DNA of 63,063 nucleotides, the filler included, from Octopus bimaculoides (Eukaryota): assembly GCF_001194135.2 (NCBI RefSeq). It is 4 parts of 4 records of this genome, joined end to end, with 100 filler letters (N's around TTAATTAATTAA, not from the genome) between each part and the next. Parts side by side here need not be neighbours in the genome. Positions count along the whole stretch, not along the records: positions 19,825 to 49,862 come from NC_069004.1; 3 more parts are not named here. The stretch is one strand, 5' to 3'. Below the pieces are notes generated by a model that saw only the letters and a list, made by a program, of their open reading frames with translations, was not told where the DNA came from and did no database searches. A program made the position numbers and the translations under genes. This document shows positions 582 to 43,613 of the stretch, in pieces (position 1 is the first letter of the stretch; each line of letters begins with the position of its first letter).

Positions 582-612
582 TGTAGTAGTAGTAGTTGTT
601 GTAGTAGTAGTA
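1..612. repeat. (GTA)n/(GGT)n trinucleotide microsatellites
   Basis: Visible AGT/GGT runs at 1-75 and 303-612, running into an N gap. Confidence 0.95.
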
Positions 613-1200
613 NNNNNNNNNNNNNNNNNNNNNNNNNNNNNNNNNNNNNNNNNNNNNNNNNNNNNNNNNNNNNNNNNNNNNNNNNNNNNNNNNNNNNNNN
701 NNNNNNNNNNNNNNNNNNNNNNNNNNNNNNNNNNNNNNNNNNNNNNNNNNNNNNNNNNNNNNNNNNNNNNNNNNNNNNNNNNNNNNNNNNNNNNNNNNNN
801 NNNNNNNNNNNNNNNNNNNNNNNNNNNNNNNNNNNNNNNNNNNNNNNNNNNNNNNNNNNNNNNNNNNNNNNNNNNNNNNNNNNNNNNNNNNNNNNNNNNN
901 NNNNNNNNNNNNNNNNNNNNNNNNNNNNNNNNNNNNNNNNNNNNNNNNNNNNNNNNNNNNNNNNNNNNNNNNNNNNNNNNNNNNNNNNNNNNNNNNNNNN
1001 NNNNNNNNNNNNNNNNNNNNNNNNNNNNNNNNNNNNNNNNNNNNNNNNNNNNNNNNNNNNNNNNNNNNNNNNNNNNNNNNGAGGAGGAGGAGTAAGATGC
1101 CGAAATAGTTTTCAACTGATTCATCAAATGTAACACACACACATAAAGATACACATACACACATACACATACGTACATTACACACGTATGAACAAGCAAT

Positions 1201-23259: not shown

Positions 23260-25400
23260 CAATGGTCAGTAGAAAGTGGGCAGGCAGTTTTTGAGTATGT
23301 GTGTGTTGTGTGGGTGTGATTTTCTAGTAGTGTGTGCCTGTATTTTTGTGTGCGTGTGTGTATGTGTATATATACGTGTGTATATGCGTGCGGTTTGCTC
23401 TGTGGATCGCACGTGGGTTATTTCGTGTATGTGTGTGCATGTGCGTGTATATGCGTAGTATGTGTGCGTGTATGTGTTAATGTTTGTTGTGTGTGTGTGA
23501 GAGTTATATGTGGGTTCATTTGCGTGTGTGTCCATGTATGTATACCTGGGTGTGTGTGTTGTGNNNNNNNNNNNNNNNNNNNNNNNNNNNNNNNNNNNNN
23601 NNNNNNNNNNNNNNNNNNNNNNNNNNNNNNNNNNNNNNNNNNNNNNNNNNNNNNNNNNNNNNNNNNNNNNNNNNNNNNNNNNNNNNNNNNNNNNNNNNNN
23701 NNNNNNNNNNNNNNNNNNNNNNNNNNNNNNNNNNNNNNNNNNNNNNNNNNNNNNNNNNNNNNNNNNNNNNNNNNNNNNNNNNNNNNNNNNNNNNNNNNNN
23801 NNNNNNNNNNNNNNNNNNNNNNNNNNNNNNNNNNNNNNNNNNNNNNNNNNNNNNNNNNNNNNNNNNNNNNNNNNNNNNNNNNNNNNNNNNNNNNNNNNNN
23901 NNNNNNNNNNNNNNNNNNNNNNNNNNNNNNNNNNNNNNNNNNNNNNNNNNNNNNNNNNNNNNNNNNNNNNNNNNNNNNNNNNNNNNNNNNNNNNNNNNNN
24001 NNNNNNNNNNNNNNNNNNNNNNNNNNNNNNNNNNNNNNNNNNNNNNNNNNNNNNNNNNNNNNNNNNNNNNNNNNNNNNNNNNNNNNNNNNNNNNNNNNNN
24101 NNNNNNNNNNNNNNNNNNNNNNNNNNNNNNNNNNNNNNNNNNNNNNNNNNNNNNNNNNNNNNNNNNNNNNNNNNNACCATATATATAGTACATGTGTGTG
24201 TGCGTGCATGTGTGCGTGTGTGTGTGTGCGTGTGTGTCTGTATGTATGTGTGTGTATATTTTGTGCGTGCGCTTGTATATATGTATATGTGTATATTGTG
24301 TATGGTTTTGTGCGTGCGTGTATTTTTGTATACGTGTGTATGTTGTGTATATGTTTGTATGTGTATGTTGTGTATATGTGCGTTCCTGTGTACGTGTGTG
24401 TGTGTGCGTGCGTTTGCTTCTGTACGTGCGTGCATGTGCTTGTGTTGTTTATGCCCATGTGTGTGTAATTGTATGCGTGTCCTTGTGAGTGTGTTGTGTT
24501 TGTGAGAGGTGTGTGTACGTGCGTGTGCGAGTATGTGTGTGTATGCGTGTGCGTGTGTGTATGTGTGTACGTATGTGTATGTGGGTATGTGTGTGGATGT
24601 GCGTACGCGCGTGTGTGTGGGATTGTGAGTGTTACGTACGTGTGCGTGCGTGTGTGTGCGCGTGTGTGTATATGTGTGTCTGTATGCGTGTGTGTATATT
24701 TTTTTGTGCGTGCGCGTATGTCTGTATGTGTGTATTGTGTATGTTTTCGTGCGTGCGTGTGTGTGTGTATGTGTGTGTATATGTGCGTTCCTGTGTATGT
24801 GTGTGCATGTGCATGCGTTTGCTTACGTACGTGCGTAAGTGCGTGTGTCATTTAAGCCCCTTGTGTGTGTAGTTGTATGCGTGTTTGTGTGAGTGTGTGT
24901 TGTGTATGTGAGAGGTGTGTGAGCGAGTGTGTGTGTGTGCATGTGTGTGTGTATATGTGTGTGTGTATATGTGTGTGTGCGTGCGTATGTGTGTGTGTGA
25001 GCGTAAAGATGTGTGCCAAAGTATGTGTGTTTTATTGCGTGTGTGTACCCCTGNNNNNNNNNNTGTGTGCCAAAGTATGTGTGTTTTATTGCGTGTGTGT
25101 ACCCCTGTGTGTGTGTGTGTGTGTGTATATGTATGTGGCTGTGTATGTATGTGTATGTAGGCGTGCACGTTATGTATGCGCGTATATATGGGTGTGTTTG
25201 TGTGTGTGTAGGGCTGTGTGAGTAGGTGTGTGTGAATAGGTATGTGTGTATCACTGTGCGTGTGTATGTGTGTATATATGTGTGCGTTCGTCTATATGTG
25301 TGTGTGAGCAATCATGCATGTTTGTCATGCATGTTGTCAGGTGTGTGGGCGGTATATATGTCAGGTGTGTGGGAGGTGTATGTGTCATATATATATATAT
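23260..25400. repeat. Degenerate TG-rich low-complexity satellite with about 400-bp higher-order duplication
   Basis: Cryptic (TG/TA/CG)n; blocks near 24330-24520 recur near 24740-24925. Confidence 0.8.
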
Positions 25401-31821: not shown

Positions 31822-32188
31822 TATTATAACGTAAGACGAATTATAATATTATACTCAGATGATAACTTTAATAAAAGAACGAAGAAAACATTGCAACAGT
31901 TCCAAACTGAAGGGCAAAATGGTGAGCTGTAACTTCAATTGTCCACGATGCAAGATGAACTATCTGTACCACAGTAAGTGTGCTAAGGTGAAAAGGGCAA
32001 ACCCTTAACAATGAGTCGATGGATATCTAACGTCACCTGGTAGCGTTCATAAAGTGTTCCCTCGGACGAGTCGACGTAAGCTTAAATAATAAACGATGTG
32101 GGAGTGAAAAACATCACGATAGAATCGTGTCCACTGATTGAATGACACTTAAACAATATTTTGTGTCGAGACAACTGGAGTTGTCTCG
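31822..32188 (-). repeat. Element A 3' LTR (367 bp)
   Basis: Direct repeat of the split right LTR; adjacent PPT TGAGAGGGAAGA (minus strand). Confidence 0.9.
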
Positions 32189-34079: not shown

Positions 34080-34551
34080 TCATTTTGCGTTGCTAACAAG
34101 TAATGACTTTAGTGCACGCCTTAATTGATGTATGTTAGGTATAAATGAGCTGTAATAACTAACAATTCCTATAAAATAAGTTAGTTTAGTTACGTGTGTG
34201 GGTGGTGGTAAATGCTTGATAATTGCCGTTTTTTCAGGATCTGGAAAACGTCCATCTTTATTCTCGACAAAACCCAAATATGTTAACTGAAGAAGAAAAA
34301 AACAGTTAGCATTTTTTTTTGGTTTTAGACGAAGACCATATTTCTTAATTTGTTCCAAGAGATTCCTTAAATGTTCTTTATGTTGATTATATAACAATAG
34401 TGTCATCAGTACACAAAGACGTACAAAAAATCCGCAAGCATACTATCCATTAGCTGTTGAAAAATCCTTGGGGCAGACTTTACCTCAAAAGGTAATCTGT
34501 TACATTGGTACAATCTACGATGAGTATTTATGGTTAGGAGCTCTTTTGATG
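34080..34551 (-). pseudogene. Element A RT C-terminal half (N-terminal half at 38200-38438)
   Basis: Removing element B restores DLVETYLTIAVSNASKELLTINTHRRLYQCNRLPFEVKSAPRIFQQLMD; the YxDD motif has a 2-nt deletion (TAC T GAT GAC). Confidence 0.88.
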
Positions 34552-34887
34552 TGTAGTGATATCAGTATGTGACAATCTACAATTTTACAGTTGCGTACGA
34601 GAAAGAGGGCTCACCGTCTTGTATGCAAAACGACGAGAAAATTAAGAACTTGTGGGACGTTCATAATAAGTAATAACATATTTATTACTGGATGTAATGC
34701 GTTAACATATAAGAATGGTTTGAAAGAAAAGACTTGTAATATATTACATGAACATACTTTGCAACCACATGTCTCAAAGCAAATGAGGCGAATATGCGCG
34801 CGAGCGGTGTGTGTGAGAGTGCCTTGGCTAAATGCGTACGACTAGGAACCGACAGGCAAAAGGAGTGCGAAATTAGAATTGCGTTCG

Positions 34888-34939
34888 CTTTATATAAGAG
34901 ATGAACCGGAAGTCCCTGACATCCACGTCATCCGGAAGT
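34888..34939 (-). promoter_or_regulatory. Element B LTR promoter module (ETS-CRE-ETS-TATA); also at 38047-38098
   Basis: Two CCGGAAGT sites flank ACGTCA; minus-strand TATATAAAG downstream; AATAAA at 34681-86 (minus); retained in both LTRs. Confidence 0.6.
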
Positions 34940-35577
34940 TAAGTGAAAGCTTCTAGAATATCCGAGAATTTTCGAGAAGATCGAGGGATATTACTCTTGC
35001 TAGATCCCTTTTTCGTTTTGCTTTCCTGCTTGACCGCCAGGGCTTACTACATAACTCACTCCTCCGACGAGAAGTCGATAAGCAAAATCATTGTAGTGAT
35101 CCAGGACAGGTACGAAGCAAAACGAGGTAGTAGAAACATGTGCTTGCAAAACAAGTAGTAAAATGGGAGAAAATCAATATATGCATCATAATAGGTACTG
35201 AATATAAATGCAGAGTTTGGTGCAGCAAACCTTTAGCTACACAGCTATGCACCTCAAACTAAATGCAAAACATGACAATACGAAAAATACAATGTGAAAC
35301 GTGCATGGGAAAAATGTTTTTGAACAAACGTTCTTTTGTAAAAGAAATAGCAAACAGTTTATTTTGTAACACAACGTTAAATATAAATGGTTCTGGATAA
35401 ATTTTGAGGCCAATGTACTGTTCTGCCACTTCTTGTGATATAAGGTTTAAAGGTATGTTGTGTTTGCGGTGCATGTGGCGGTGTTGGTGTAGGAGTGAAT
35501 GTGCGTGGTATGTCAGGTTCTGGAATGAGATTTTCTGAGAAAGCCGTCTTTATTCTGTCGATGTTTCTTTTCGACCA

Positions 35578-35870
35578 TTAACGTCGACTATGAATTTTTT
35601 GGTGAGTGCGACAGTACACGATAAGGTCCAGAATAAGGTGATGTAAGAGATCCTTTAACGGAATCGTTCCGAATAAAAACATGTGTCCACTCAGGGATGT
35701 CTGATGGGAGAGCAGAAGAAATGGATTGGTCCCGCGGAGACATTGGTGGAAGATTGGAGAAGTAAGAACGAAGTCTGTTGACATATGATGTCGTATCAAA
35801 ATCTGATGAATCAACTGGTGTTAACATTTGACCGGGAAGCATCAAGGTGGTGCCGTAAAGAAGTTCAGCT
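35578..35870 (-). pseudogene. Element B integrase C-terminal remnant
   Basis: AELLYGTTLMLPG...FIRNDSVKGSLTSPYSGPYRVL. Confidence 0.85.
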
Positions 35871-36561
35871 AAGGAGAATCTTTTAAGTTGTGTAGAGGAT
35901 AACGATCGGGCGTGGTGATAGCATTAAGTCTCCTGTAATCACCAACGGGTCTAAAATCCGCTTCACCCTTCGGAGCTAAGTGTAGCGGAGATGCCCAAGG
36001 GCTAGTAGAAGGACGTATAAGACCGAGCTGGAGCATGTGCTCGAATTCAGCGCGGGCTTTCTTGAGCCTGTCTGGTGCTAATCTACGTGGACGAGAGAAA
36101 ACGGGTAGACCAGTTGTAATAAAATGTTGAGTCGAGTGGACTGTCTGAGTAGGCTTAAATGAGAGATCCGTTAACTCGGGAGACGAGGCAAGAAGAGTAT
36201 GGAAATGGTTACTGGCATCATCTACAAAAAATGATGGGCTGAGGGTAGCAGCGATAGATTCGCGTGCAGGCGTAGATAAAGATGTGGTAGTATCCACAAG
36301 TCTCTGTTTCCTGACATCTACCAGGAATGAATAGTGGTGTAAGAAGTCCGCCCCGAGAATAGGACGAGGCAGGTCGGCGATGACAAAAATCCATTTAAAA
36401 TTTCGACGCAAGGCAAAGTCTAGAGTTACAGATATCTGCCCGTAGGTTTTGATGGGAGACTGGTTCACCGCGTATAAGGAAATACTGGATAACTGTGGCT
36501 TGTTAAAGCTGAACCGTAATGGCAAAATACTGCAACTTGATCCTGTATCGACCATAAACAA
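35869..36561 (-). pseudogene. Element B protease and RT N-terminus
   Basis: FMVDTGSSCSILP; SPWASPLHLAPK...RPVGDYRRLNAITTPDRYPL; truncated. Confidence 0.9.
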
Positions 36562-36645
36562 CCTGTCTGAGACTAGGTCCCTAATGAAAAAAGCACGATT
36601 AGCTTAAGTTGTTAGAGAGGTCTGACGTGCTCAGGCTCTCTAGGT

Positions 36646-37373
36646 TCAGTTTTCCGACACTTTAAAAGCATAAGGCTTGTTACAATGACGTGCCTTGTCG
36701 TGAAAACGTGCGTGGTACCAACACACCGAAGAATTGTTGATTGAAAAACTGTTGCGTCGTTGAGAAGAGAAAGACCGGCTTCGCGAACGCAGTCTAACTC
36801 GATAGAATTTAGCTATTTGGCGCGTTAAACCATCGATAGCCTTTAACATGGCGTCTCCATTTTTAGTATCAGGTTGTTGTTGAGAAGACAATGAATCAAT
36901 AACCGAAGCAGCCGCGGTGGGTCTGTGAGAGATTTTCATTATCCTATCTGCAGATGAAGCGATTTGGTCTATAGAGCTGGTGTCAACCATATTCGCCAAT
37001 ATCGTCTGTACAATAATTGTTTTACGAAGAAGCTGTCCTCAGGTGTATCGTCACTGAGTTCTAGGATCCACTTAAGAAATTCCGAAGGAGTTCTGTCACC
37101 CAGGCTCTCATCTTGTAACAATGCACGGAATCGGCTTTCTGATGATTTAGAATTTCTGCGTAGTACTTCTGTTCTTAAAGAATCGTAGGTTATGCCTTGT
37201 GGACGATCTGTGATATCTTTAACAGTGTCTGCTAAAATGGCGGGAATGCCACTAATAAGCACGTGTAGCTTTTGTTGAGCGGCTTGTATTCCACGTGCTG
37301 TGAAGTAAGAATCAAGCTGTGCAAACCATAGCTTAGCATCACCAGAATAAGCTGGTATGGAAGTGTTACTCAT
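36646..37373 (-). pseudogene. Element B gag (frameshifted)
   Basis: LWFAQLDSYF...LGDRTPSEFL; C-terminal CWYHARFHDKARHCNKP. Confidence 0.88.
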
Positions 37374-37606
37374 GATTATGACACGCTTTTCCAGCGGAGC
37401 ACAGGATGTTCACAGGTATGCTTGTTCAGTTGAAAGGAGACACAATCGTTTATGACAAAGAACAGGCGTGATAAGTGGACTTTCTTGTTTAACGCGGAAG
37501 ACACGAAATTATTTCAAAACTAGAATATCAGAGGAGCTGGTAGAGTAATGTAGAAATTACCTTGAAGAGTGTAGTACGGCGTCAGTTTACCGTGTGCTGT
37601 GGGTTG

Positions 37607-37723
37607 CGTATTCAAACGTCAAGTTCACCATTTTGTAATAGCTAGCGTATTCAAAAGTTGGGTTCCCTATTTTGTAGCGGCTATCGTATTCTAACGTCGG
37701 GGTTACCATTTTGTAGTGATGTC
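37607..37723 (-). repeat. Three tandem 39-bp units of LTR-end stub plus PBS
   Basis: Units start at 37607, 37646 and 37685, each CGTATTC.AA.GT....T..C.ATTTTGTA; unit 3 is the functional PBS/LTR junction. Confidence 0.9.
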
Positions 37724-38199
37724 AGTATGTGACAACCTACAATTTTACAATTATATGCGAGAAAGAGGGATCACCATCTTGTACGTAAAACGATAAGGAA
37801 AATAAGAACTTGTGAGACGTACATAATAAGTCATAACATATTTATTACTGGATGTAATGCGTTAACATATAAGAATGGTTTGAAAGAAAAGGCTTGTAAC
37901 ATATTACATGAACATACTTTGTAATCATATGTCTCAAAGCAAATGATGTAAATATGTGCGCGTGCGGTGTGTGTGCGAGTGGTGCGGCTCAATGCGTACG
38001 CCTAGGAACCGACAGGCAAAAGAGCACGAAATTAGAATTGCGTTCGCTTTATATAAGAGATGAACCGGAAGTCCCTGACTTCCACGTCATCCGGAAGTTA
38101 ATTGAAAGCTTCTAGAATATCGAGAAGGTCGAGGGAGATTATTCTCGTTAGATCCCTTTTTTGTTTTGCCTTCCTTCTTGACCGCCGTGGGTCACTACA

Positions 38200-38438
38200 G
38201 ATGCATTGCTTACAGCTATTGTTAAATATGTTTCAACTAAGTCAATCTTGGAAAACCATCCCCCACCCCACCCATTTAATCTTGTAAATAAGTCTTCGGG
38301 AACAGGTAGTGGATAGCGATGTAGCGCTAATGAATCGTTAAGTCCCGTAGAGAAATCAGCAAATATACGTATAGAGGCATTTGTTTTTTGTCTTTTATAT
38401 ACTATAACAATGGGCGCAGCCCATGATGAATAATTCAC
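38200..38438 (-). pseudogene. Element A RT N-terminal half
   Basis: YSSWAAPIVIV...IRIFADFSTGLND...YPLPVPEDLF...FSKIDL. Confidence 0.9.
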
Positions 38439-39463: not shown

Positions 39464-39849
39464 AATAATGTTATAACGTAAGACGAATAATAATATTGTG
39501 CTCAGATAATAGCTTTATAAACGAATGAAGAAAACATTGCAACATTTCCAAACTGAAGTGGAAATTGGCGAGCTATAACGTCAATTGTCCACGATGCAAA
39601 ATGAACCGTCTGTACCACAGTAAGTGTGTTAAGGCGAAAAGAGTAAACCCTCAACAATGAGCCTATAGCTTTGTTAAGCTATACGCAAATAAACCCGTGG
39701 AGACGAGAATGTATTTATCAAAGGTTTATATTGTTGCTTCTACTTCTCCACCGGAAGTCCGCCTCGCTGCTGACCAGCTCCCTAGCTAGCCCGCAGCGAC
39801 GTCCCTGTCTACAGTTCGTCTGTCATGAATCCTGTCCTACTGTTCACTG

Positions 39850-41245
39850 TCATTGGAACCGGGAAGACGTTTTAATTGCCCTGCCCGTGCGTGTTGTTAC
39901 TCGGCTCTTTGGTGACTGTTCCTTGTCAAAGGTTGGTGTGATCTGTTTGGGGCGGCTCCTGTTTGGTGGTTGGTCTACCTGAACGGGGCTGTCGATATCG
40001 AGATAGGCTGATTTAAACCTATCAATGGAGACTATGTCTTGTCGTCTGCCAATTAGGAGTTGAAATGATTTGTCTTCCGGATGTATGATTTCATACGGAC
40101 CATCGTAGGGTGACTGGAGGGGTTTTCGTCGTGTGTTACGTTGAACGAACACAAAGTTAGCCGTGCGGAGGTCGTTCGGTACGGATGATCTGGGTATACC
40201 GTGTGTTGGCATGGGAATAGGGCGCAACTAGCCCACGCTGTCTCTCAGTTGAGCAAGGTACCTTTTGACATTCGGATCTGACTTCGTATTCGGAAGGAAC
40301 TCTCCCGGCACTGTAAGAGGAGCATCATACACCGTTTCCGCGGAGGAAGTGTTGAGATTTTCTTTTGGGGCGGTGCAGATTCCCAGCATCACCTATGGGA
40401 GTTGATCAATCCAATTAGGCCCGTTAAGTCTGGTTGTCAGGGATTCCTTCAGGCGGCAGTGAAATTCTCCACTAACCCGTTGGCCTGTGGATGGTAGGCT
40501 GTTGTGCGGTTCATTGTGATTCTAAAAAGGTCACACATGTCATTCTACAACTTTGAGGTGAATTGTGGACCCCGATCGGATTAGATGCTGTCTGGGACAC
40601 CGAAACGGGCGACCCAGTTTGCGGTGAAGGCTCGGCTGACTTCTTGTGTTTCCGTGCCCGAGAGGGATAGCTTCAGACCAACGGGTAGCAGTCTACCGAG
40701 GTCAGTAGGTACGAGCAACGCTGCGAAGGTAGTAGGGGGCCGATAAGGTCGATGTTGACGTGGTTGAAACGGGCCTGTGGTAGTTAATAGTTGCCGAGGG
40801 GTGCTTTAATGTGTTGATGGACCTTGGCTTGTTGACAGGGGATGCAGGTCCTGGTCCATTCCCCACTCTGTTTGGCCATACGGTGCCAGATAAATTTGCT
40901 TGACAGCAGGCGCTGTGTGGCTTTAGTACCTGGATGGGACAGTCCGTGAATGACGTCGAAAAACTTTTTGCGCCTCGCTGACAGGACGATCGGTCGTGGC
41001 TTCCCAGTGGATACATCACACAGTAGGGTTGTGCCGTTAGAGCCAAAGTGAACATCCTGCAAGGAAAGTGAGGTCACAGCAGTGCGGTAGGCCCTAATCT
41101 TGTTATCTGTCTGTTGGGCTGCAGCCTTAGCCTCGTAATCCAGGCCTTCCGTTATTGGGGCTAGGTAGGTGTGAGAGCAGATAGTAGCACGAGAGAGGGC
41201 GTCAGCGACTAAGTTGCTCTTGCCGGTTATGTGTTGCACGTCCAT
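39850..41245 (-). pseudogene. Element C integrase remnant
   Basis: HITGKSNLVADALSR; IHGLSHPG...CIPCQQAK (HHCC); QSPYDGPYEI...VSIDRFK. Confidence 0.9.
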
Positions 41246-41252
41246 GGTGTTC

Positions 41253-42260
41253 TCAGAAATGGCCGATAGCTATCGTTGCTAGCGTGCAGACCAAGGCTCT
41301 GAGAGCTTGCTCATAGCAAAGGTGAGTGGATTGTGCTGCGTTTTTCAGATCAAATGGTATACATATGAATTCGTACAGACCGAAAGGAGTGATCACAGCG
41401 GTTTTCGGTACATCGTCGTCTTGTATTGGTATTTGGTGGTAACCGCGGATGAGGTTGACTTTTGAGAAAACCGAGCACCTGGCTAGCTGGGCTGAGAAAT
41501 CTTGTATGTGCGAAATGGGGTNNNNNNNNNNNNNNNNNNNNNNNNNNNNNNNNNNNNNNNNNNNNNNNNNNNNNNNNNNNNNNNNNNNNNNNNNNNNNNN
41601 NNNNNNNNNNNNNNNNNNNNNNNNNNNNNNNNNNNNNNNNNNNNNNNNNNNNNNNNNNNNNNNNNNNNNNNNNNNNNNNNNNNNNNNNNNNNNNNNNNNN
41701 NNNNNNNNNNNNNNNNNNNNNNNNNNNNNNNNNNCCATATTGTCAAACTCGGCCTTCGCAATAGCAAGTTTGTCAGGTGATAGACGACGTACGCGGCTGT
41801 GCACTGGGGGCCGGTGGTGGGGATGTGGTGTGTCACCCCGTGGCAGGCTGTAAGTTTGGAGAATGTCGGGGTAGTGAGATTGGGACGACGCGCAAAGAGA
41901 TTCGAGAATTTGTCCTCGGTCTGCGAGACGGCTGCTATGCGGGGGTGGGAGCATGTGCAGATGTTGCCAGAGACACGGAAGCGTATGTTGCTGTTGATGA
42001 GTTGTCTCCCATGCAAATCAACCAGTAGCAAGTGCGCTTGAAGAAAGTCTGCCCCGATAATGGGCTGATGGACATCGGTGATAGTGAATGTCCATGTGTA
42101 TTTTTGTTAGCTGATATTGAGAGAAAGGGGGCGGCGACCGTATGCCTCAATTGTGGACCCCTTGGCGGCTGTTCAAGGTTGACTCTGCTTTCCGTAACGG
42201 AGGTCCTTTGCTGACGCCGGGATCCTGCCGACTTCTGCTCCGGTGTCGATTAGGAACCTA
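41253..42260 (-). pseudogene. Element C protease and RT remnant (RT cut after KNAAQS and fused to the end of RNase H)
   Basis: FLIDTG near 42240-42256; RGYHQIP...KTAVITPFGLYEF; junction near 41328. Confidence 0.88.
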
Positions 42261-42690
42261 CGTCCGGAGCTCCGATCGCGGACATAGAGAAGCAATTGAT
42301 CGTGTCTGTCGGCCACCAGGGCATTCAATGGCGGCCGGCCCTGGAGTTTCCCTGAGCCAGTGGTGAAGGGGTCCCGAAGCTACATGGTTGTNNNNNNNNN
42401 NNNNNNNNNNNNNNNNNNNNNNNNNNNNNNNNNNNNNNNNNNNNNNNNNNNNNNNNNNNNNNNNNNNNNNNNNNNNNNNNNNNNNNNNNNNNNNNNNNNN
42501 NNNNNNNNNNNNNNNNNNNNNNNNNNNNNNNNNNNNNNNNNNNNNNNNNNNNNNNNNNNNNNNNNNNNNNNNNNNNNNNNNNNNNNNNNNNNNNNNNNNN
42601 NNNNNNNNNNNNNNNNNNNNNNNNNNNNNNNNNNNNNTCGGGACCGACCCTATGGCATTGACCATAACACCACTGGATAAAAAATGCTTG

Positions 42691-43140
42691 TCAGATGTGC
42701 AGGTCCTTATCTCCGTCTGAATTATGAGGGCCTGGACCTGGGTGATAGTTTGCGGAGGAATATTTTCCTAAACGAAAAGGAAGGTGACTCACGGGGTAAG
42801 GGACTAATGCCAACATCCTGTCCATCAACTCCGAACGCTTAGAATCGCTTAATTCCTCCTCCAGTATCTTGGCTGTCGCTTCTCGTTCGCTGCGCCGGAA
42901 TGTATACACAAGTCTGTTTTTTAATGTGGTGTATTTGTGCGTTGCTGGGGGTTGGGTTAAAATGTCCAGCACCCTTGTTGCCTTGCTTTCATCCAGTGCC
43001 GCTACAACGTACGAATATTTCGTTAGGTCTGCAGTTATTTTGTTTATGATAAATTGGGCTTCCTCCTGCGCGAACCATAGTTCAGCCCTCTTTGGCCAGA
43101 ACTGTGATAGCTTCAGTGTTGTTTTGCGATCGCTTGCCAT
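42691..43140 (-). pseudogene. Element C gag remnant
   Basis: LKLSQFWPKRAELWFAQEEAQF...TKYSYVVAAL...SELMDRMLAL. Confidence 0.9.
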
Positions 43141-43613
43141 GTTTATTTCGATAGCGAGCGCTGTTGTTCTATCGTCGGAGTCATCAGTTATAGCTTTGTT
43201 AAGCTATACACAAATAAACTCGTGGAGACGAGAATGTGTTTATCAAAAGTTTATTACTTTAAGTACACTAGGGCGGTAGCCGCCAGTTACTTCTGTTTAA
43301 ATAATTCAGATTCATTTAACGCTTACTGCTTATATTATGCTGCTTCTACTTCTCCACCGAAAGTCCACCTCGCTGCAGACCAGCTCCCTAGCTAGCCCAC
43401 AGCAAAGTTCCTGTCTACAGCTCGTCTGTTATAAACCCTGCCCTACAAGTCGATGTTTATCTAACGTCATCTGGTAGCGTCCATAAAATGCTTCTTCGGA
43501 CGAATCGACGTAAGCTTAAACAATACACGACGTGAGAGTGAAAAACATCACATGATAGAATTGTGTCCACTTAACAAACAATGTTTTGTGTCGAAACAAC
43601 TCGAGTTGTCTCA

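What the first reader, a model, noticed from the sequence alone, without database searches (positions are those of the whole stretch)
37568..37723. Tandem array of LTR-end plus extended tRNA-Trp primer-binding units in a Gypsy leader
Seen: three exact-period 39-bp units. On the element strand each reads stub-TACA-AAA-TGGT(A/G)ACCCCGACG-like-TT(T/A)GAATACG, and only the variable stub and PBS core differ (ATCACTACA, GCCGCTACA, GCTATTACA). A very degenerate fourth unit may lie at 37568-37606. Established: CsRn1 elements prime with tRNA-Trp, and a normal PBS is at most 18 nt because m1A58 stops copying. From the recalled eukaryotic tRNA-Trp 3' end (GGTTGCGTGTTCAAATCACGTCGGGGTCACCA), the match runs through the whole T-arm to about 29 nt (unit 1: GGTTGCGTATTCAAA---CGTCAAGTTCACCA) with a shared 3-nt deletion. 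Inference: a repeat-and-variable-stub record of successive read-through and mis-transfer events that added att+PBS units. Possible functions are alternative priming sites or decoys for 3' tRNA fragments that silence LTR elements via the PBS. I know of no description of this arrangement.
Basis: partly seen in the sequence, partly recalled or inferred. Interest (0 to 1): 0.82.

Follow-up and report, generated by a model that had tools for sequence, protein, structure and literature searches.

The report
Triplicated tRNA-Trp primer site in retrotransposon
An old, broken CsRn1-type Gypsy retrotransposon in an octopus-like genome carries three 39-bp tandem copies of its "LTR tip + tRNA-Trp primer-binding site" cassette, and an older copy buried inside the LTR suggests that such duplications let the element move its priming site and lengthen its LTR.

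Summary
TRF finds a 39-bp repeat with 2.8 copies and no indels at 37606-37715. It lies at the LTR/leader junction of a 3.6-kb minus-strand LTR element (34552-38199) with a 4-bp TSD, a CHCC-type gag motif and a tRNA-Trp PBS, the published hallmarks of the CsRn1 clade.

Each unit reads TACA-AAA, then a 14-nt acceptor/CCA complement, then a 10-15-nt complement of the tRNA-Trp T arm and variable loop. Three tRNA nucleotides (60-62) are skipped.

- All units share the 3-nt skip and the same mismatch opposite G53, so they were copied from each other, not captured separately from tRNA.
- The "stubs" fit diverged tRNA variable-loop complement better than foreign LTR tips.
- A fourth unit is not significant.
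- Units differ by 23-33%, the LTRs by 10.5%, so the array predates this insertion.

New here: a 17-nt cassette head (TACA-AGA-TGGTGATCCC) lies 68 nt inside both LTRs and in a relative's LTR. This implies a past shift of priming to a downstream copy.

Function of the extra units is unproven. No other copy of the family could be retrieved. I rate it a new variant of known kinds, of moderate interest.

The parts
34552..38199 (-). Element B: an internally deleted CsRn1-clade Ty3/Gypsy LTR retrotransposon (3648 bp), inserted in the RT gene of another retroelement
   Evidence: LTR pair (D4/D8), termini TGTAG...CTACA and TSD. ORFs are gag, PR plus the start of RT, and the C-terminal part of IN only. 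The PR-RT region is 91% identical at nucleotide level to an Octopus sinensis locus.
37712..38199 (-). 5' LTR (488 bp). Its last four bases, TACA, are the head of array unit U1.
   Evidence: Identity to the 3' LTR is 89.5% (437/488).
34552..35051 (-). 3' LTR (500 bp). It ends ...ATCACTACA exactly where U1's TACA ends, so the last round of priming used U1.
38200..38203 (-). Target-site duplication CATC, 5' copy
34548..34551 (-). Target-site duplication CATC, 3' copy
37684..37722 (-). Unit U1: LTR tip ACATCACTACA, spacer AAA, PBS core TGGTAACCCCGACG (37695-37708; 13/14 to tRNA-Trp), T-arm complement TTAGAATACG. This is the priming site used in the last cycle.
   Evidence: predicted duplex with the tRNA-Trp 3' part -38.3 kcal/mol, against -36.6 for a canonical 18-nt PBS
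37645..37683 (-). Unit U2: stub TAGCCGC, TACA-AAA, decayed core TAGGGAACCCAACT (9/14), intact T-arm complement TTTGAATACGC
   Evidence: -27.2 kcal/mol; T-arm part P=0.0035
37602..37644 (-). Unit U3 (37606-37644) plus AACC (37602-37605): stub TAGCTAT, TACA-AAA, core TGGTGAACTTGACG (11/14; two of the three changes would be G.U wobbles in RNA), T-arm/variable-loop complement TTTGAATACGCAACC (14/15)
   Evidence: -41.8 kcal/mol; P<0.0005
37767..37783 (-). Relic cassette head inside the 5' LTR, 68 nt upstream of U1's head: TACA-AGA-TGGTGATCCC
   Evidence: the pattern TACAAAATGGTGACCCC with up to 3 mismatches hits only the three units and this site in each LTR (5 hits, 0.07 expected). The homologous site in L001's LTR reads TTAAATGGTGACCC.
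34607..34623 (-). The same relic cassette head in the 3' LTR: TACA-AGA-CGGTGAGCCC
35055..35065 (-). Polypurine tract GGAGGAGTGAG, just 5' of the 3' LTR
36969..37373 (-). gag N-terminal ORF (134 aa, DUF7041)
   Evidence: Homologues are Octopus proteins.
36646..36999 (-). gag C-terminal ORF carrying CWYHARFHDKARHCNKPY = CX2HX9CX3[C->Y], the CHCC signature
   Evidence: motif definition from PMC2582038
35869..36561 (-). Protease plus the first part of reverse transcriptase. The rest of RT, RNase H and most of integrase are deleted.
35588..35845 (-). Remnant of the integrase C-terminus
   Evidence...YSGPYRVL motif. The assignment rests on my own knowledge of the GPY/F module; Pfam gave no hit.

Best explanation
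The array is a tandem triplication of the element's LTR-tip/primer-binding cassette. It arose before this copy inserted, in at least two rounds of 39-nt duplication. The cassette consists of the last bases of U5 (TACA), a 3-nt spacer (AAA) and a bipartite tRNA-Trp binding site. That site has 14 nt complementary to the CCA end, acceptor strand and part of the T stem (tRNA 63-76); it skips tRNA 60-62; it then has 10-15 nt complementary to the T loop, 5' T stem and variable loop (tRNA 45-59). Shown: the last retrotransposition cycle primed at U1, because the 3' LTR ends exactly at U1's TACA. Shown: the units are copies of each other and are older than the insertion. Inferred: the duplications arose by microhomology-guided template switching or slippage (CAC precedes TACA in the LTR, and CAC ends the block after U3), most likely during reverse transcription. 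Inferred: because each copy carries both an integrase-compatible ...CA tip and a PBS, priming from a downstream copy gives viable progeny in which everything upstream becomes U5. The cassette head now lying 68 nt inside both LTRs, and in the LTR of relative L001, is the trace of one such shift. Inferred: the T-arm complement is a working second half of the PBS, analogous to Ty1 boxes or the Ty3 bipartite PBS. It strengthens annealing of full-length tRNA-Trp. U2 and U3 are decaying spare copies, and U3 may still bind tRNA.
For: Array and anatomy. LTR boundaries, TSD and PPT. tRNA-Trp alignment with the shared 3-nt gap: using the sequence; the last 18-22 nt are identical in mouse and mosquito small RNAs. 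Units copied from one another: all have T opposite G53, whereas L001 and element A have C. U2 and U3 share the GAAC core change and the TAGC stub, giving the tree ((U2,U3),U1) and at least two events. Array older than the insertion: 13, 12 and 9 differences per 39 nt against 4.1 expected from the 10.5% LTR divergence (Poisson P=3e-4, 1e-3, 0.02). In-LTR relic: (5 hits against 0.07 expected), conserved in L001. T-arm complement retained in a second, distant family: L008 (O. sinensis) has GAACACTCAACC 17 nt after its PBS (P=0.001), and B has GAATACGCAACC; each differs from the tRNA complement GAACACGCAACC at a different single base. Predicted RNA duplexes with the tRNA 3' part: U1 -38.3, U3 -41.8, inferred ancestral bipartite site -54.3, canonical 18-nt PBS -36.6, 14-nt core alone -29.5 kcal/mol. 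The array RNA has no stable fold of its own (z=+0.98), so it would be free for intermolecular pairing. Precedents: PMC3286476, PMC8599865.
Against: Only one copy of family B with a leader could be examined. The O. sinensis relative L003 is 5'-truncated. DNA-pattern, gag-profile and array-ORF searches found nothing. The closest relative with a leader (L001; gag 68% aa identity) shows no detectable tandem structure; only a roughly 49%-identical stretch occupies U2's place. The host's own tRNA-Trp was not available, so the T-arm part rests on the human sequence. In L001, element A and L009 the T-arm complement is only a 5-6-nt GAACA match and is not individually significant. Two other octopus families (L005, L007) have plain 11-nt PBSs, and L010, L011 and L004b have contiguous 18-nt types. 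m1A58 could not pair in the proposed duplex. Better conservation of A/T-rich blocks than of the CpG-containing core could reflect mutation bias rather than selection. Enrichment of tandem duplications at PBS junctions is not significant once B, the ascertained case, is set aside (1 strong and 1 borderline of 10). The stub-origin comparison (5/7 against 3/7) is weak.
Confidence: 0.6

Rival explanations
1. One reading: each unit was added by a separate event in which plus-strand strong-stop synthesis read through m1A58 into the tRNA primer and then mis-transferred. On this view the units are independent captures of tRNA sequence, and the stubs are LTR tips of different origins.
For: tRNA complementarity does extend past position 58. 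Incorporation of reverse-transcribed mature tRNA, with a duplication of the LTR end, is documented for cqgypsy_1. The U3 stub AGCTATTAC resembles AGCTATAAC at the LTR/PBS junction of element A when offset by 2 nt.
Against: All three units share the same 3-nt deletion and the same mismatch opposite the universally conserved G53, which independent copies of the tRNA would not share. No unit, and no relative, has the contiguous 32-nt read-through product; relatives with a contiguous PBS stop at 18-19 nt. U2 and U3 stubs differ only by three transitions. An end-anchored comparison of the stubs with 11 collected LTR tips gives no convincing match. The original extension may still descend from a single ancient read-through.
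Confidence: 0.1
2. A neutral minisatellite: host replication slippage after integration duplicated 39 bp that happened to span the LTR/PBS junction. It has no connection with reverse transcription or priming.
For: Tandem repeats with periods of 27-54 bp occur elsewhere in the piece. About 1.5% of 200-nt windows score as high. Tandem repeats in 5' UTRs of Gypsy elements are common.
Against: Units are 23-33% diverged against 10.5% for the LTRs, so at least the U1/U2-3 split predates the insertion. A further cassette head lies inside both LTRs and in L001's LTR, which requires passage through reverse transcription. The block boundaries coincide with the functional module. The U2/U3 split (P=0.02) could still be close to, or after, the insertion.
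Confidence: 0.1
3. A selected multi-site array: the extra units are kept because they bind additional tRNA-Trp molecules (for primer recruitment or packaging), or because they soak up 3' tRNA fragments that would otherwise block or silence the real PBS.
For: The T-arm complement and TACAAAAT blocks are nearly invariant among units while the cores decay. U3 is predicted to bind the tRNA 3' part as strongly as a canonical PBS. The array RNA is unstructured. The trade-off between priming and tRF silencing at the PBS is an established idea (PMC7472051).
Against: There are no population or family data and no small-RNA data. The conserved blocks are A/T-rich and the decayed parts hold CpGs, so mutation bias could explain the pattern. 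L001 shows no maintained array. A decoy for 18-nt tRFs would need the intact core, which U2 has lost.
Confidence: 0.15

Closest known systems
CsRn1-clade Ty3/Gypsy retrotransposons (CsRn1, PwRn1, AgCR, Kabuki)
   Same: tRNA-Trp PBS, 4-bp TSD, gag CX2HX9CX3C motif, and TG...CA LTRs (PMC2582038).
   Different: The clade descriptions I could read mention a single PBS. They do not mention a tandem cassette array, a skipped bipartite site or an in-LTR PBS relic. The paper's PBS alignment is an image that I could not read.
Extended or bipartite primer sites of yeast Ty1 (PBS plus boxes 0, 1, 2.1) and Ty3 (bipartite PBS); U5-TpsiC-loop pairing of tRNA-Trp-primed avian retroviruses (all from my own knowledge, not checked in the library)
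   Same: The genome pairs with the T arm or loop of the primer tRNA in addition to its 3' end.
   Different: Here the second segment lies directly 3' of the core, separated only by a 3-nt tRNA bulge, and covers tRNA 45-59. Function is untested.
Lentiviral complementarity to tRNA-Lys3 beyond the 18-nt PBS, up to the base before m5Um54, as a 'second RT stop' (PMC8599865)
   Same: Conserved genome-tRNA complementarity past position 58. It would let plus-strand strong-stop DNA that reads through A58 still pair after transfer.
   Different: The lentiviral case is contiguous and about 4 nt long. Here the extension is 15 nt, reaches the variable loop and carries a 3-nt gap.
Culex quinquefasciatus cqgypsy_1 (Osvaldo lineage): a dimer of mature tRNAs in place of the PBS, with a 26-nt direct duplication of the 5' LTR end (PMC3286476)
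   Same: Sequence derived from mature tRNA (with CCA) beyond PBS length sits directly after the 5' LTR, together with a duplicated LTR end.
   Different: cqgypsy_1 has two whole tRNAs arranged head to head. Here there are three direct 39-bp partial units (tRNA 45-76 minus 3 nt), already diverged.
Tandem repeats in 5' UTRs of Gypsy-like elements (gypsy insulator, ZAM, Culex Mag-like cqgypsy_24/25/66)
   Same: A tandem array in the leader, between the LTR and gag.
   Different: Those repeats lie downstream of the PBS and act, where tested, as DNA regulatory sites. Here the repeat unit is the LTR-tip/PBS junction itself.

Membership tests
CsRn1 clade of Ty3/Gypsy | PBS complementary to the 3' end of tRNA-Trp | tested here: met
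   U1 core TGGTAACCCCGACG matches 13/14, three bases after the LTR end. The clade feature is stated in PMC2582038.
CsRn1 clade of Ty3/Gypsy | 4-bp target-site duplication | tested here: met
   CATC at 38200-38203 and at 34548-34551.
CsRn1 clade of Ty3/Gypsy | Gag CHCC signature CX2HX9CX3C | tested here: met
   CWYHARFHDKARHCNKPY has the correct spacing, but the last Cys is mutated to Tyr in this dead copy. The paper notes imperfect motifs in some members.
CsRn1 clade of Ty3/Gypsy | RT/RH/IN phylogeny placing the element in the clade | not tested
   Most of RT, RNase H and IN are deleted in this copy and no tree was built. The PR-RT fragment's homologues are Gypsy-type RVT_1 proteins from octopus, spiders and flatworms.
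Tandem repeat (minisatellite-type array) | At least 2 head-to-tail copies with a constant period, above chance | tested here: met
   TRF period 39, 2.8 copies, score 129. Self-match score 38, in the top 1.1% of 1354 windows.
Extended/bipartite PBS (Ty1/Ty3 type) | A second genome segment complementary to the T arm of the same primer tRNA | tested here: met
   TTTGAATACGCAACC against the tRNA complement TTTGAACACGCAACC gives 14/15 in U3 (P<0.0005 by shuffles) and 10/11 in U2. A distant family, L008, gives 11/12.
Extended/bipartite PBS (Ty1/Ty3 type) | The second segment is required for tRNA annealing or initiation of reverse transcription | not testable with these tools
   Only predicted duplex energies are available.
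tRNA read-through capture (cqgypsy_1 type; aberrant plus-strand strong-stop products) | A contiguous copy of mature tRNA, including CCA, running past position 58 | tested here: not met
   The match passes position 58 but is not contiguous: a 3-nt gap is present in every unit. It also stops at G45, with no match to tRNA 1-44.
tRNA read-through capture (cqgypsy_1 type) | Independent capture events for each unit | tested here: not met
   The units share the same gap and the same mismatch opposite G53.
tRNA gene, pseudogene or tRNA-derived SINE on the + strand | A tRNA-like fold or model hit, with no encoded CCA | tested here: not met
   ARAGORN finds 0 genes. Rfam gives no tRNA hit even at E<=10. 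CCA is encoded, and each copy abuts an LTR tip.

The most novel reading that the evidence does not exclude
In this lineage of cephalopod CsRn1-like elements the unit of evolution at the 5' junction is a portable cassette (integrase-ready CA tip + spacer + bipartite tRNA-Trp site). Duplicating it creates spare priming sites. Using a downstream spare moves the LTR/leader boundary and makes U5 grow by swallowing older cassettes. On this reading the 3-nt skip at tRNA 60-62 plus the T-arm complement is an adaptation: full-length tRNA-Trp gets about 29 paired bases, while the 18- and 22-nt 3' tRNA fragments, whose 5' ends fall in the skipped or bulged part, pair only through their last 14 nt. The element would thus keep priming while evading tRF blocking and silencing.
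Probability: 0.15. Interest if true: 0.75.

Novelty: new variant of a known kind. Interest (0 to 1): 0.45.

Why it matters
How LTR boundaries and primer-binding sites change over evolutionary time is poorly documented. PBS switches are usually inferred only from comparing families.

This locus preserves three stages side by side:
- an old cassette head now inside U5;
- the cassette used in the last replication cycle;
- two spare copies in the leader.

That gives a concrete, testable route for moving a priming site and lengthening an LTR.

The skipped, T-arm-extended tRNA-Trp site also bears on two current questions. One is how retroelements cope with read-through of tRNA position 58 (PMC8599865). 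The other is how they balance tRNA priming against silencing by 3' tRNA fragments (PMC7472051). The practical weight is limited, because this is a single, old, defective copy and nothing functional was tested.

Tried and rejected
- **Whole-tRNA retrocopy.** tRNA positions 1-44 do not match the sequence upstream of U3 (score 12 against a null of 14). Rejected.
- **Fourth unit.** Not significant.
- **tRNA gene, SINE or structured RNA.** ARAGORN, Rfam and RNAfold were all negative.
- **Finding other copies of family B.**
  - An exact look-up of the gag protein found nothing on record.
  - The gag search returned only relatives at or below 68% identity.
  - The O. sinensis copy L003, 91% identical, lacks the LTR and leader.
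  - An array DNA pattern gave 0 hits in metagenome contigs.
  - A gag-profile scan confirmed no relatives.
  - The 40-aa ORF that runs through the array has no homologue.
- **Unit 2 in L001.** By eye I thought L001 had a second decayed unit. The tandem-score test does not support it (score 7, P=0.84), and TRF finds nothing. I keep only the weaker point that about 49% identity to U2 is seen in the alignment.
- **Shared 3-nt-gap extension in element A, L001 and L009.** These are only 5-6-nt GAACA matches and are not individually significant. I downgraded them to 'suggestive'.
- **Enrichment of tandem duplications at PBS junctions across 11 junctions.** Not significant once B is excluded.
- **Stubs as LTR tips of other families.** The U3 stub resembles element A's junction only with a 2-nt offset. 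End-anchored comparison is poor, so this was not adopted.
- **Homology between the 3' UTR and the leader around the extra ATCACTACAA.** Not significant as an alignment (P=0.33).
- **L002, L004, L006 and L007.** These gave little usable junction information.

Full report
**What is there**

On the + strand, TRF reports a 39-bp repeat at 37606-37715, with 2.8 copies, 76% matches and no indels. Read on the minus strand the three units are:
- U1 (37722..37684): ACATCACTACA-AAA-TGGTAACCCCGACG-TTAGAATACGA
- U2 (37683..37645): TAGCCGCTACA-AAA-TAGGGAACCCAACT-TTTGAATACGC
- U3 (37644..37606): TAGCTATTACA-AAA-TGGTGAACTTGACG-TTTGAATACGC, followed by AACC

Of the 39 columns, 22 are invariant. Variation is concentrated in the 7-nt stub and the 14-nt core. 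The suggested fourth unit is not distinguishable from chance (P about 0.1).

**Context**

The array sits exactly at the 5' LTR/leader junction of a minus-strand LTR element spanning 34552-38199.
- The LTRs are 488 and 500 bp, read TGTAG...CTACA, and are 89.5% identical.
- There is a 4-bp TSD, CATC, and a polypurine tract before the 3' LTR.
- The gag N-terminal ORF carries DUF7041.
- A second gag ORF carries CX2HX9CX3 with the last Cys mutated.
- Protease plus the first part of RT follows, then only a C-terminal integrase remnant.

So this copy has lost most of pol. A tRNA-Trp PBS, a 4-bp TSD and the CHCC gag motif are the published hallmarks of the CsRn1 clade (PMC2582038).

The nearest proteins and DNA come from Octopus. 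An O. sinensis locus is 91% identical over 984 bp, so the host is an octopus-like cephalopod. The element is itself inserted in the RT gene of another retroelement.

**The tRNA match**

I used a published human tRNA-Trp sequence (bioRxiv 10.1101/400127). Its last 18-22 nt are identical in mouse tRFs and in a mosquito small RNA.
- U3 aligns over tRNA 45-76, 25/29, with one 3-nt gap (tRNA 60-62, or equivalently 59-61).
- U1 aligns 20/24 with the same gap.
- U2 keeps only the T-arm part, 10/11.

These are the top matches in the 30-kb piece. Nothing matches tRNA 1-44. No tRNA gene or Rfam family is detected.

**How the units are related**

All three units share two features: the 3-nt gap, and a T where the tRNA complement has C (opposite the universally conserved G53). 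The related leader L001 and the neighbouring element A have C at that position. The units are therefore copies of each other, not separate captures of tRNA.

U2 and U3 also share a core change (GAAC) and the stub start TAGC, and they are the most similar pair (77% against 67-69%). This gives ((U2,U3),U1) and at least two duplication events.

Units differ at 9-13 of 39 positions, where the LTR divergence predicts about 4 (P = 0.02 to 3e-4). The array, or at least the split between U1 and U2/3, therefore predates this insertion and has passed through reverse transcription.

The stubs need not be foreign LTR tips:
- U2 and U3 stubs differ by three transitions.
- Their inferred ancestor TAGCCAC fits AACCCAC, the sequence after U3 (tRNA variable-loop complement plus CAC), at 5/7.
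- It fits the element's own LTR tip ACATCAC at only 3/7.
- CAC occurs at both ends of the 39-nt block, a plausible microhomology for slippage or template switching.

This last point is weak evidence.

**An older cassette inside the LTR**

Searching TACAAAATGGTGACCCC with up to 3 mismatches gives five hits in the window, against 0.07 expected. Three are the units. The other two are one site in each LTR, 68 nt upstream of U1's head: 37767-37783 TACA-AGA-TGGTGATCCC, and 34607-34623 in the 3' LTR. The homologous place in the LTR of L001 reads TTAAATGGTGACCC.

The 3' boundary of an LTR is set by where the tRNA primes. A cassette head inside U5 of both LTRs therefore means that an ancestor primed from a downstream copy, and the older copy became part of the LTR. 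This is an inference, but a tight one if the motif is truly homologous. A unit that carries both a ...CA tip and a PBS is exactly what such a shift needs.

**Is the T-arm complement functional?**

- A distant O. sinensis family (L008; LTRs 93% identical) has TGGTGACCCCGA, then 19 unrelated nucleotides, then GAACACTCAACC (P=0.001).
- B has GAATACGCAACC. Each differs from the tRNA complement GAACACGCAACC at a different base, while the leaders are otherwise unalignable. This pattern suggests constraint.
- Predicted duplexes with the tRNA 3' part are -38.3 (U1), -41.8 (U3) and -27.2 (U2) kcal/mol. A canonical 18-nt PBS gives -36.6 and the 14-nt core alone gives -29.5.
- The array RNA has no stable fold of its own.

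Against generality:
- L005 and L007 have plain 11-nt sites.
- L010, L011 and L004b have contiguous 18-19-nt sites.
- In L001, element A and L009 the evidence is a short GAACA match that is not significant alone.

Known analogues are:
- the Ty1 boxes and the Ty3 bipartite PBS (from my own knowledge);
- the lentiviral extension of complementarity to the base before position 54, which tolerates read-through of A58 (PMC8599865).

**Other junction duplications**

- L008 has a 42-bp x2 duplication of the PBS 3' half plus the T-arm complement.
- L011's 5' LTR carries a second TATAA-A-TGGTAA head that its 3' LTR lacks.

With B set aside as the ascertained case, one strong and one borderline case among ten junctions is not a significant enrichment.

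**Comparison with the literature**

- Tandem repeats in Gypsy leaders are common.
- Reverse-transcribed mature tRNAs with a 26-nt LTR-end duplication at the PBS have been described for Culex cqgypsy_1.
- A phrase search for natural duplicated or tandem PBSs returned nothing relevant, within the limits of that library.

I therefore file this as a new variant of known kinds, not a new category.

**Limits**

- No second copy of family B with a leader could be obtained.
- The host tRNA-Trp was not available.
- Nothing functional was tested.

**A note on handling**

In early scripts the 3.6-kb defective copy, which lacks most of RT, RNase H and integrase, was written to a scratch file as a BLAST query. 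The file was deleted.

Noticed in passing
window 35091-35100 (minus strand): An exact copy of the LTR-terminal 10-mer ATCACTACAA lies about 40 nt upstream of the 3' LTR, just 5' of the polypurine tract. The 9-mer occurs only three times in 30 kb (0.23 expected). It is also the reverse complement of the LTR start TGTAGTGA, so it could close a hairpin around the PPT.
   Followed up: partly
window ~39664-43442 (minus strand): A second DUF7041-gag element (A), with LTRs TGTAGG...GCTATA, a TSD-like G(A/G)CT and a tRNA-Trp-like PBS TGATGACTCCGACG followed by ATAGAACA. It is nested inside an LTR of a third family, whose pieces are at 39500-39663 and 43441-43551, with another copy at 31868-32117.
   Followed up: partly
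window 38148-38438 (minus strand), continuing below 34548: Element B interrupts the reverse-transcriptase ORF of another retroelement. The ORF reads straight into B's LTR, and the RT-like frame resumes after the TSD.
   Followed up: no
L011 3523-3576 and 7808-7885 (ENA ERZ21867824): The 5' LTR carries a 23-nt extra segment holding a second LTR-tip/PBS head (TGTATAA-ATGGTAA), 30 nt before the functional one (GTTATAA-ATGGTAAC). The 3' LTR lacks it. Either the junction alone was duplicated or the 3' LTR lost the segment.
   Followed up: partly
L008 4347-4430 (Octopus sinensis CM016860.1): A 42-bp x2 near-identical tandem duplication (35 nt at 97%) covers the 3' half of the PBS, a 19-nt spacer and the T-arm complement GAACACTCAACC.
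   Followed up: partly
L010 4012-4060 (ENA ERZ21867824): A contiguous but C-to-T-decayed 19-nt tRNA-Trp PBS (TGTTGACCTTGATGTGATT) is followed about 28 nt later by a second partial PBS-like stretch (ACCCGACGAGATTCA). The repeat tools did not pick this up.
   Followed up: no
window 38188-38199; L009 2987-2998; L005 4550-4561: The LTR 5' ends of several octopus CsRn1-like families are conserved (TGTAGTGACCC, TGTAGTGACACC, TGTAGTAGCACC). In B the start TAGTGACCCA resembles the PBS core TGGTGACCCC.
   Followed up: no
window 24193-25310: A long TG/CA-rich low-complexity tract (about 1.1 kb) generates many overlapping TRF rows and spurious long ORFs.
   Followed up: no
L009 ~588-622 (minus strand; Octopus sinensis CM016863.1): An isolated B-like junction, CACA-AAAAAT-TGGTAACTCCGACG-TAAGAATA (84% identical to B's junction over 32 nt), with no recognisable gag downstream. 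It is probably a fragment of a B-related element.
   Followed up: partly
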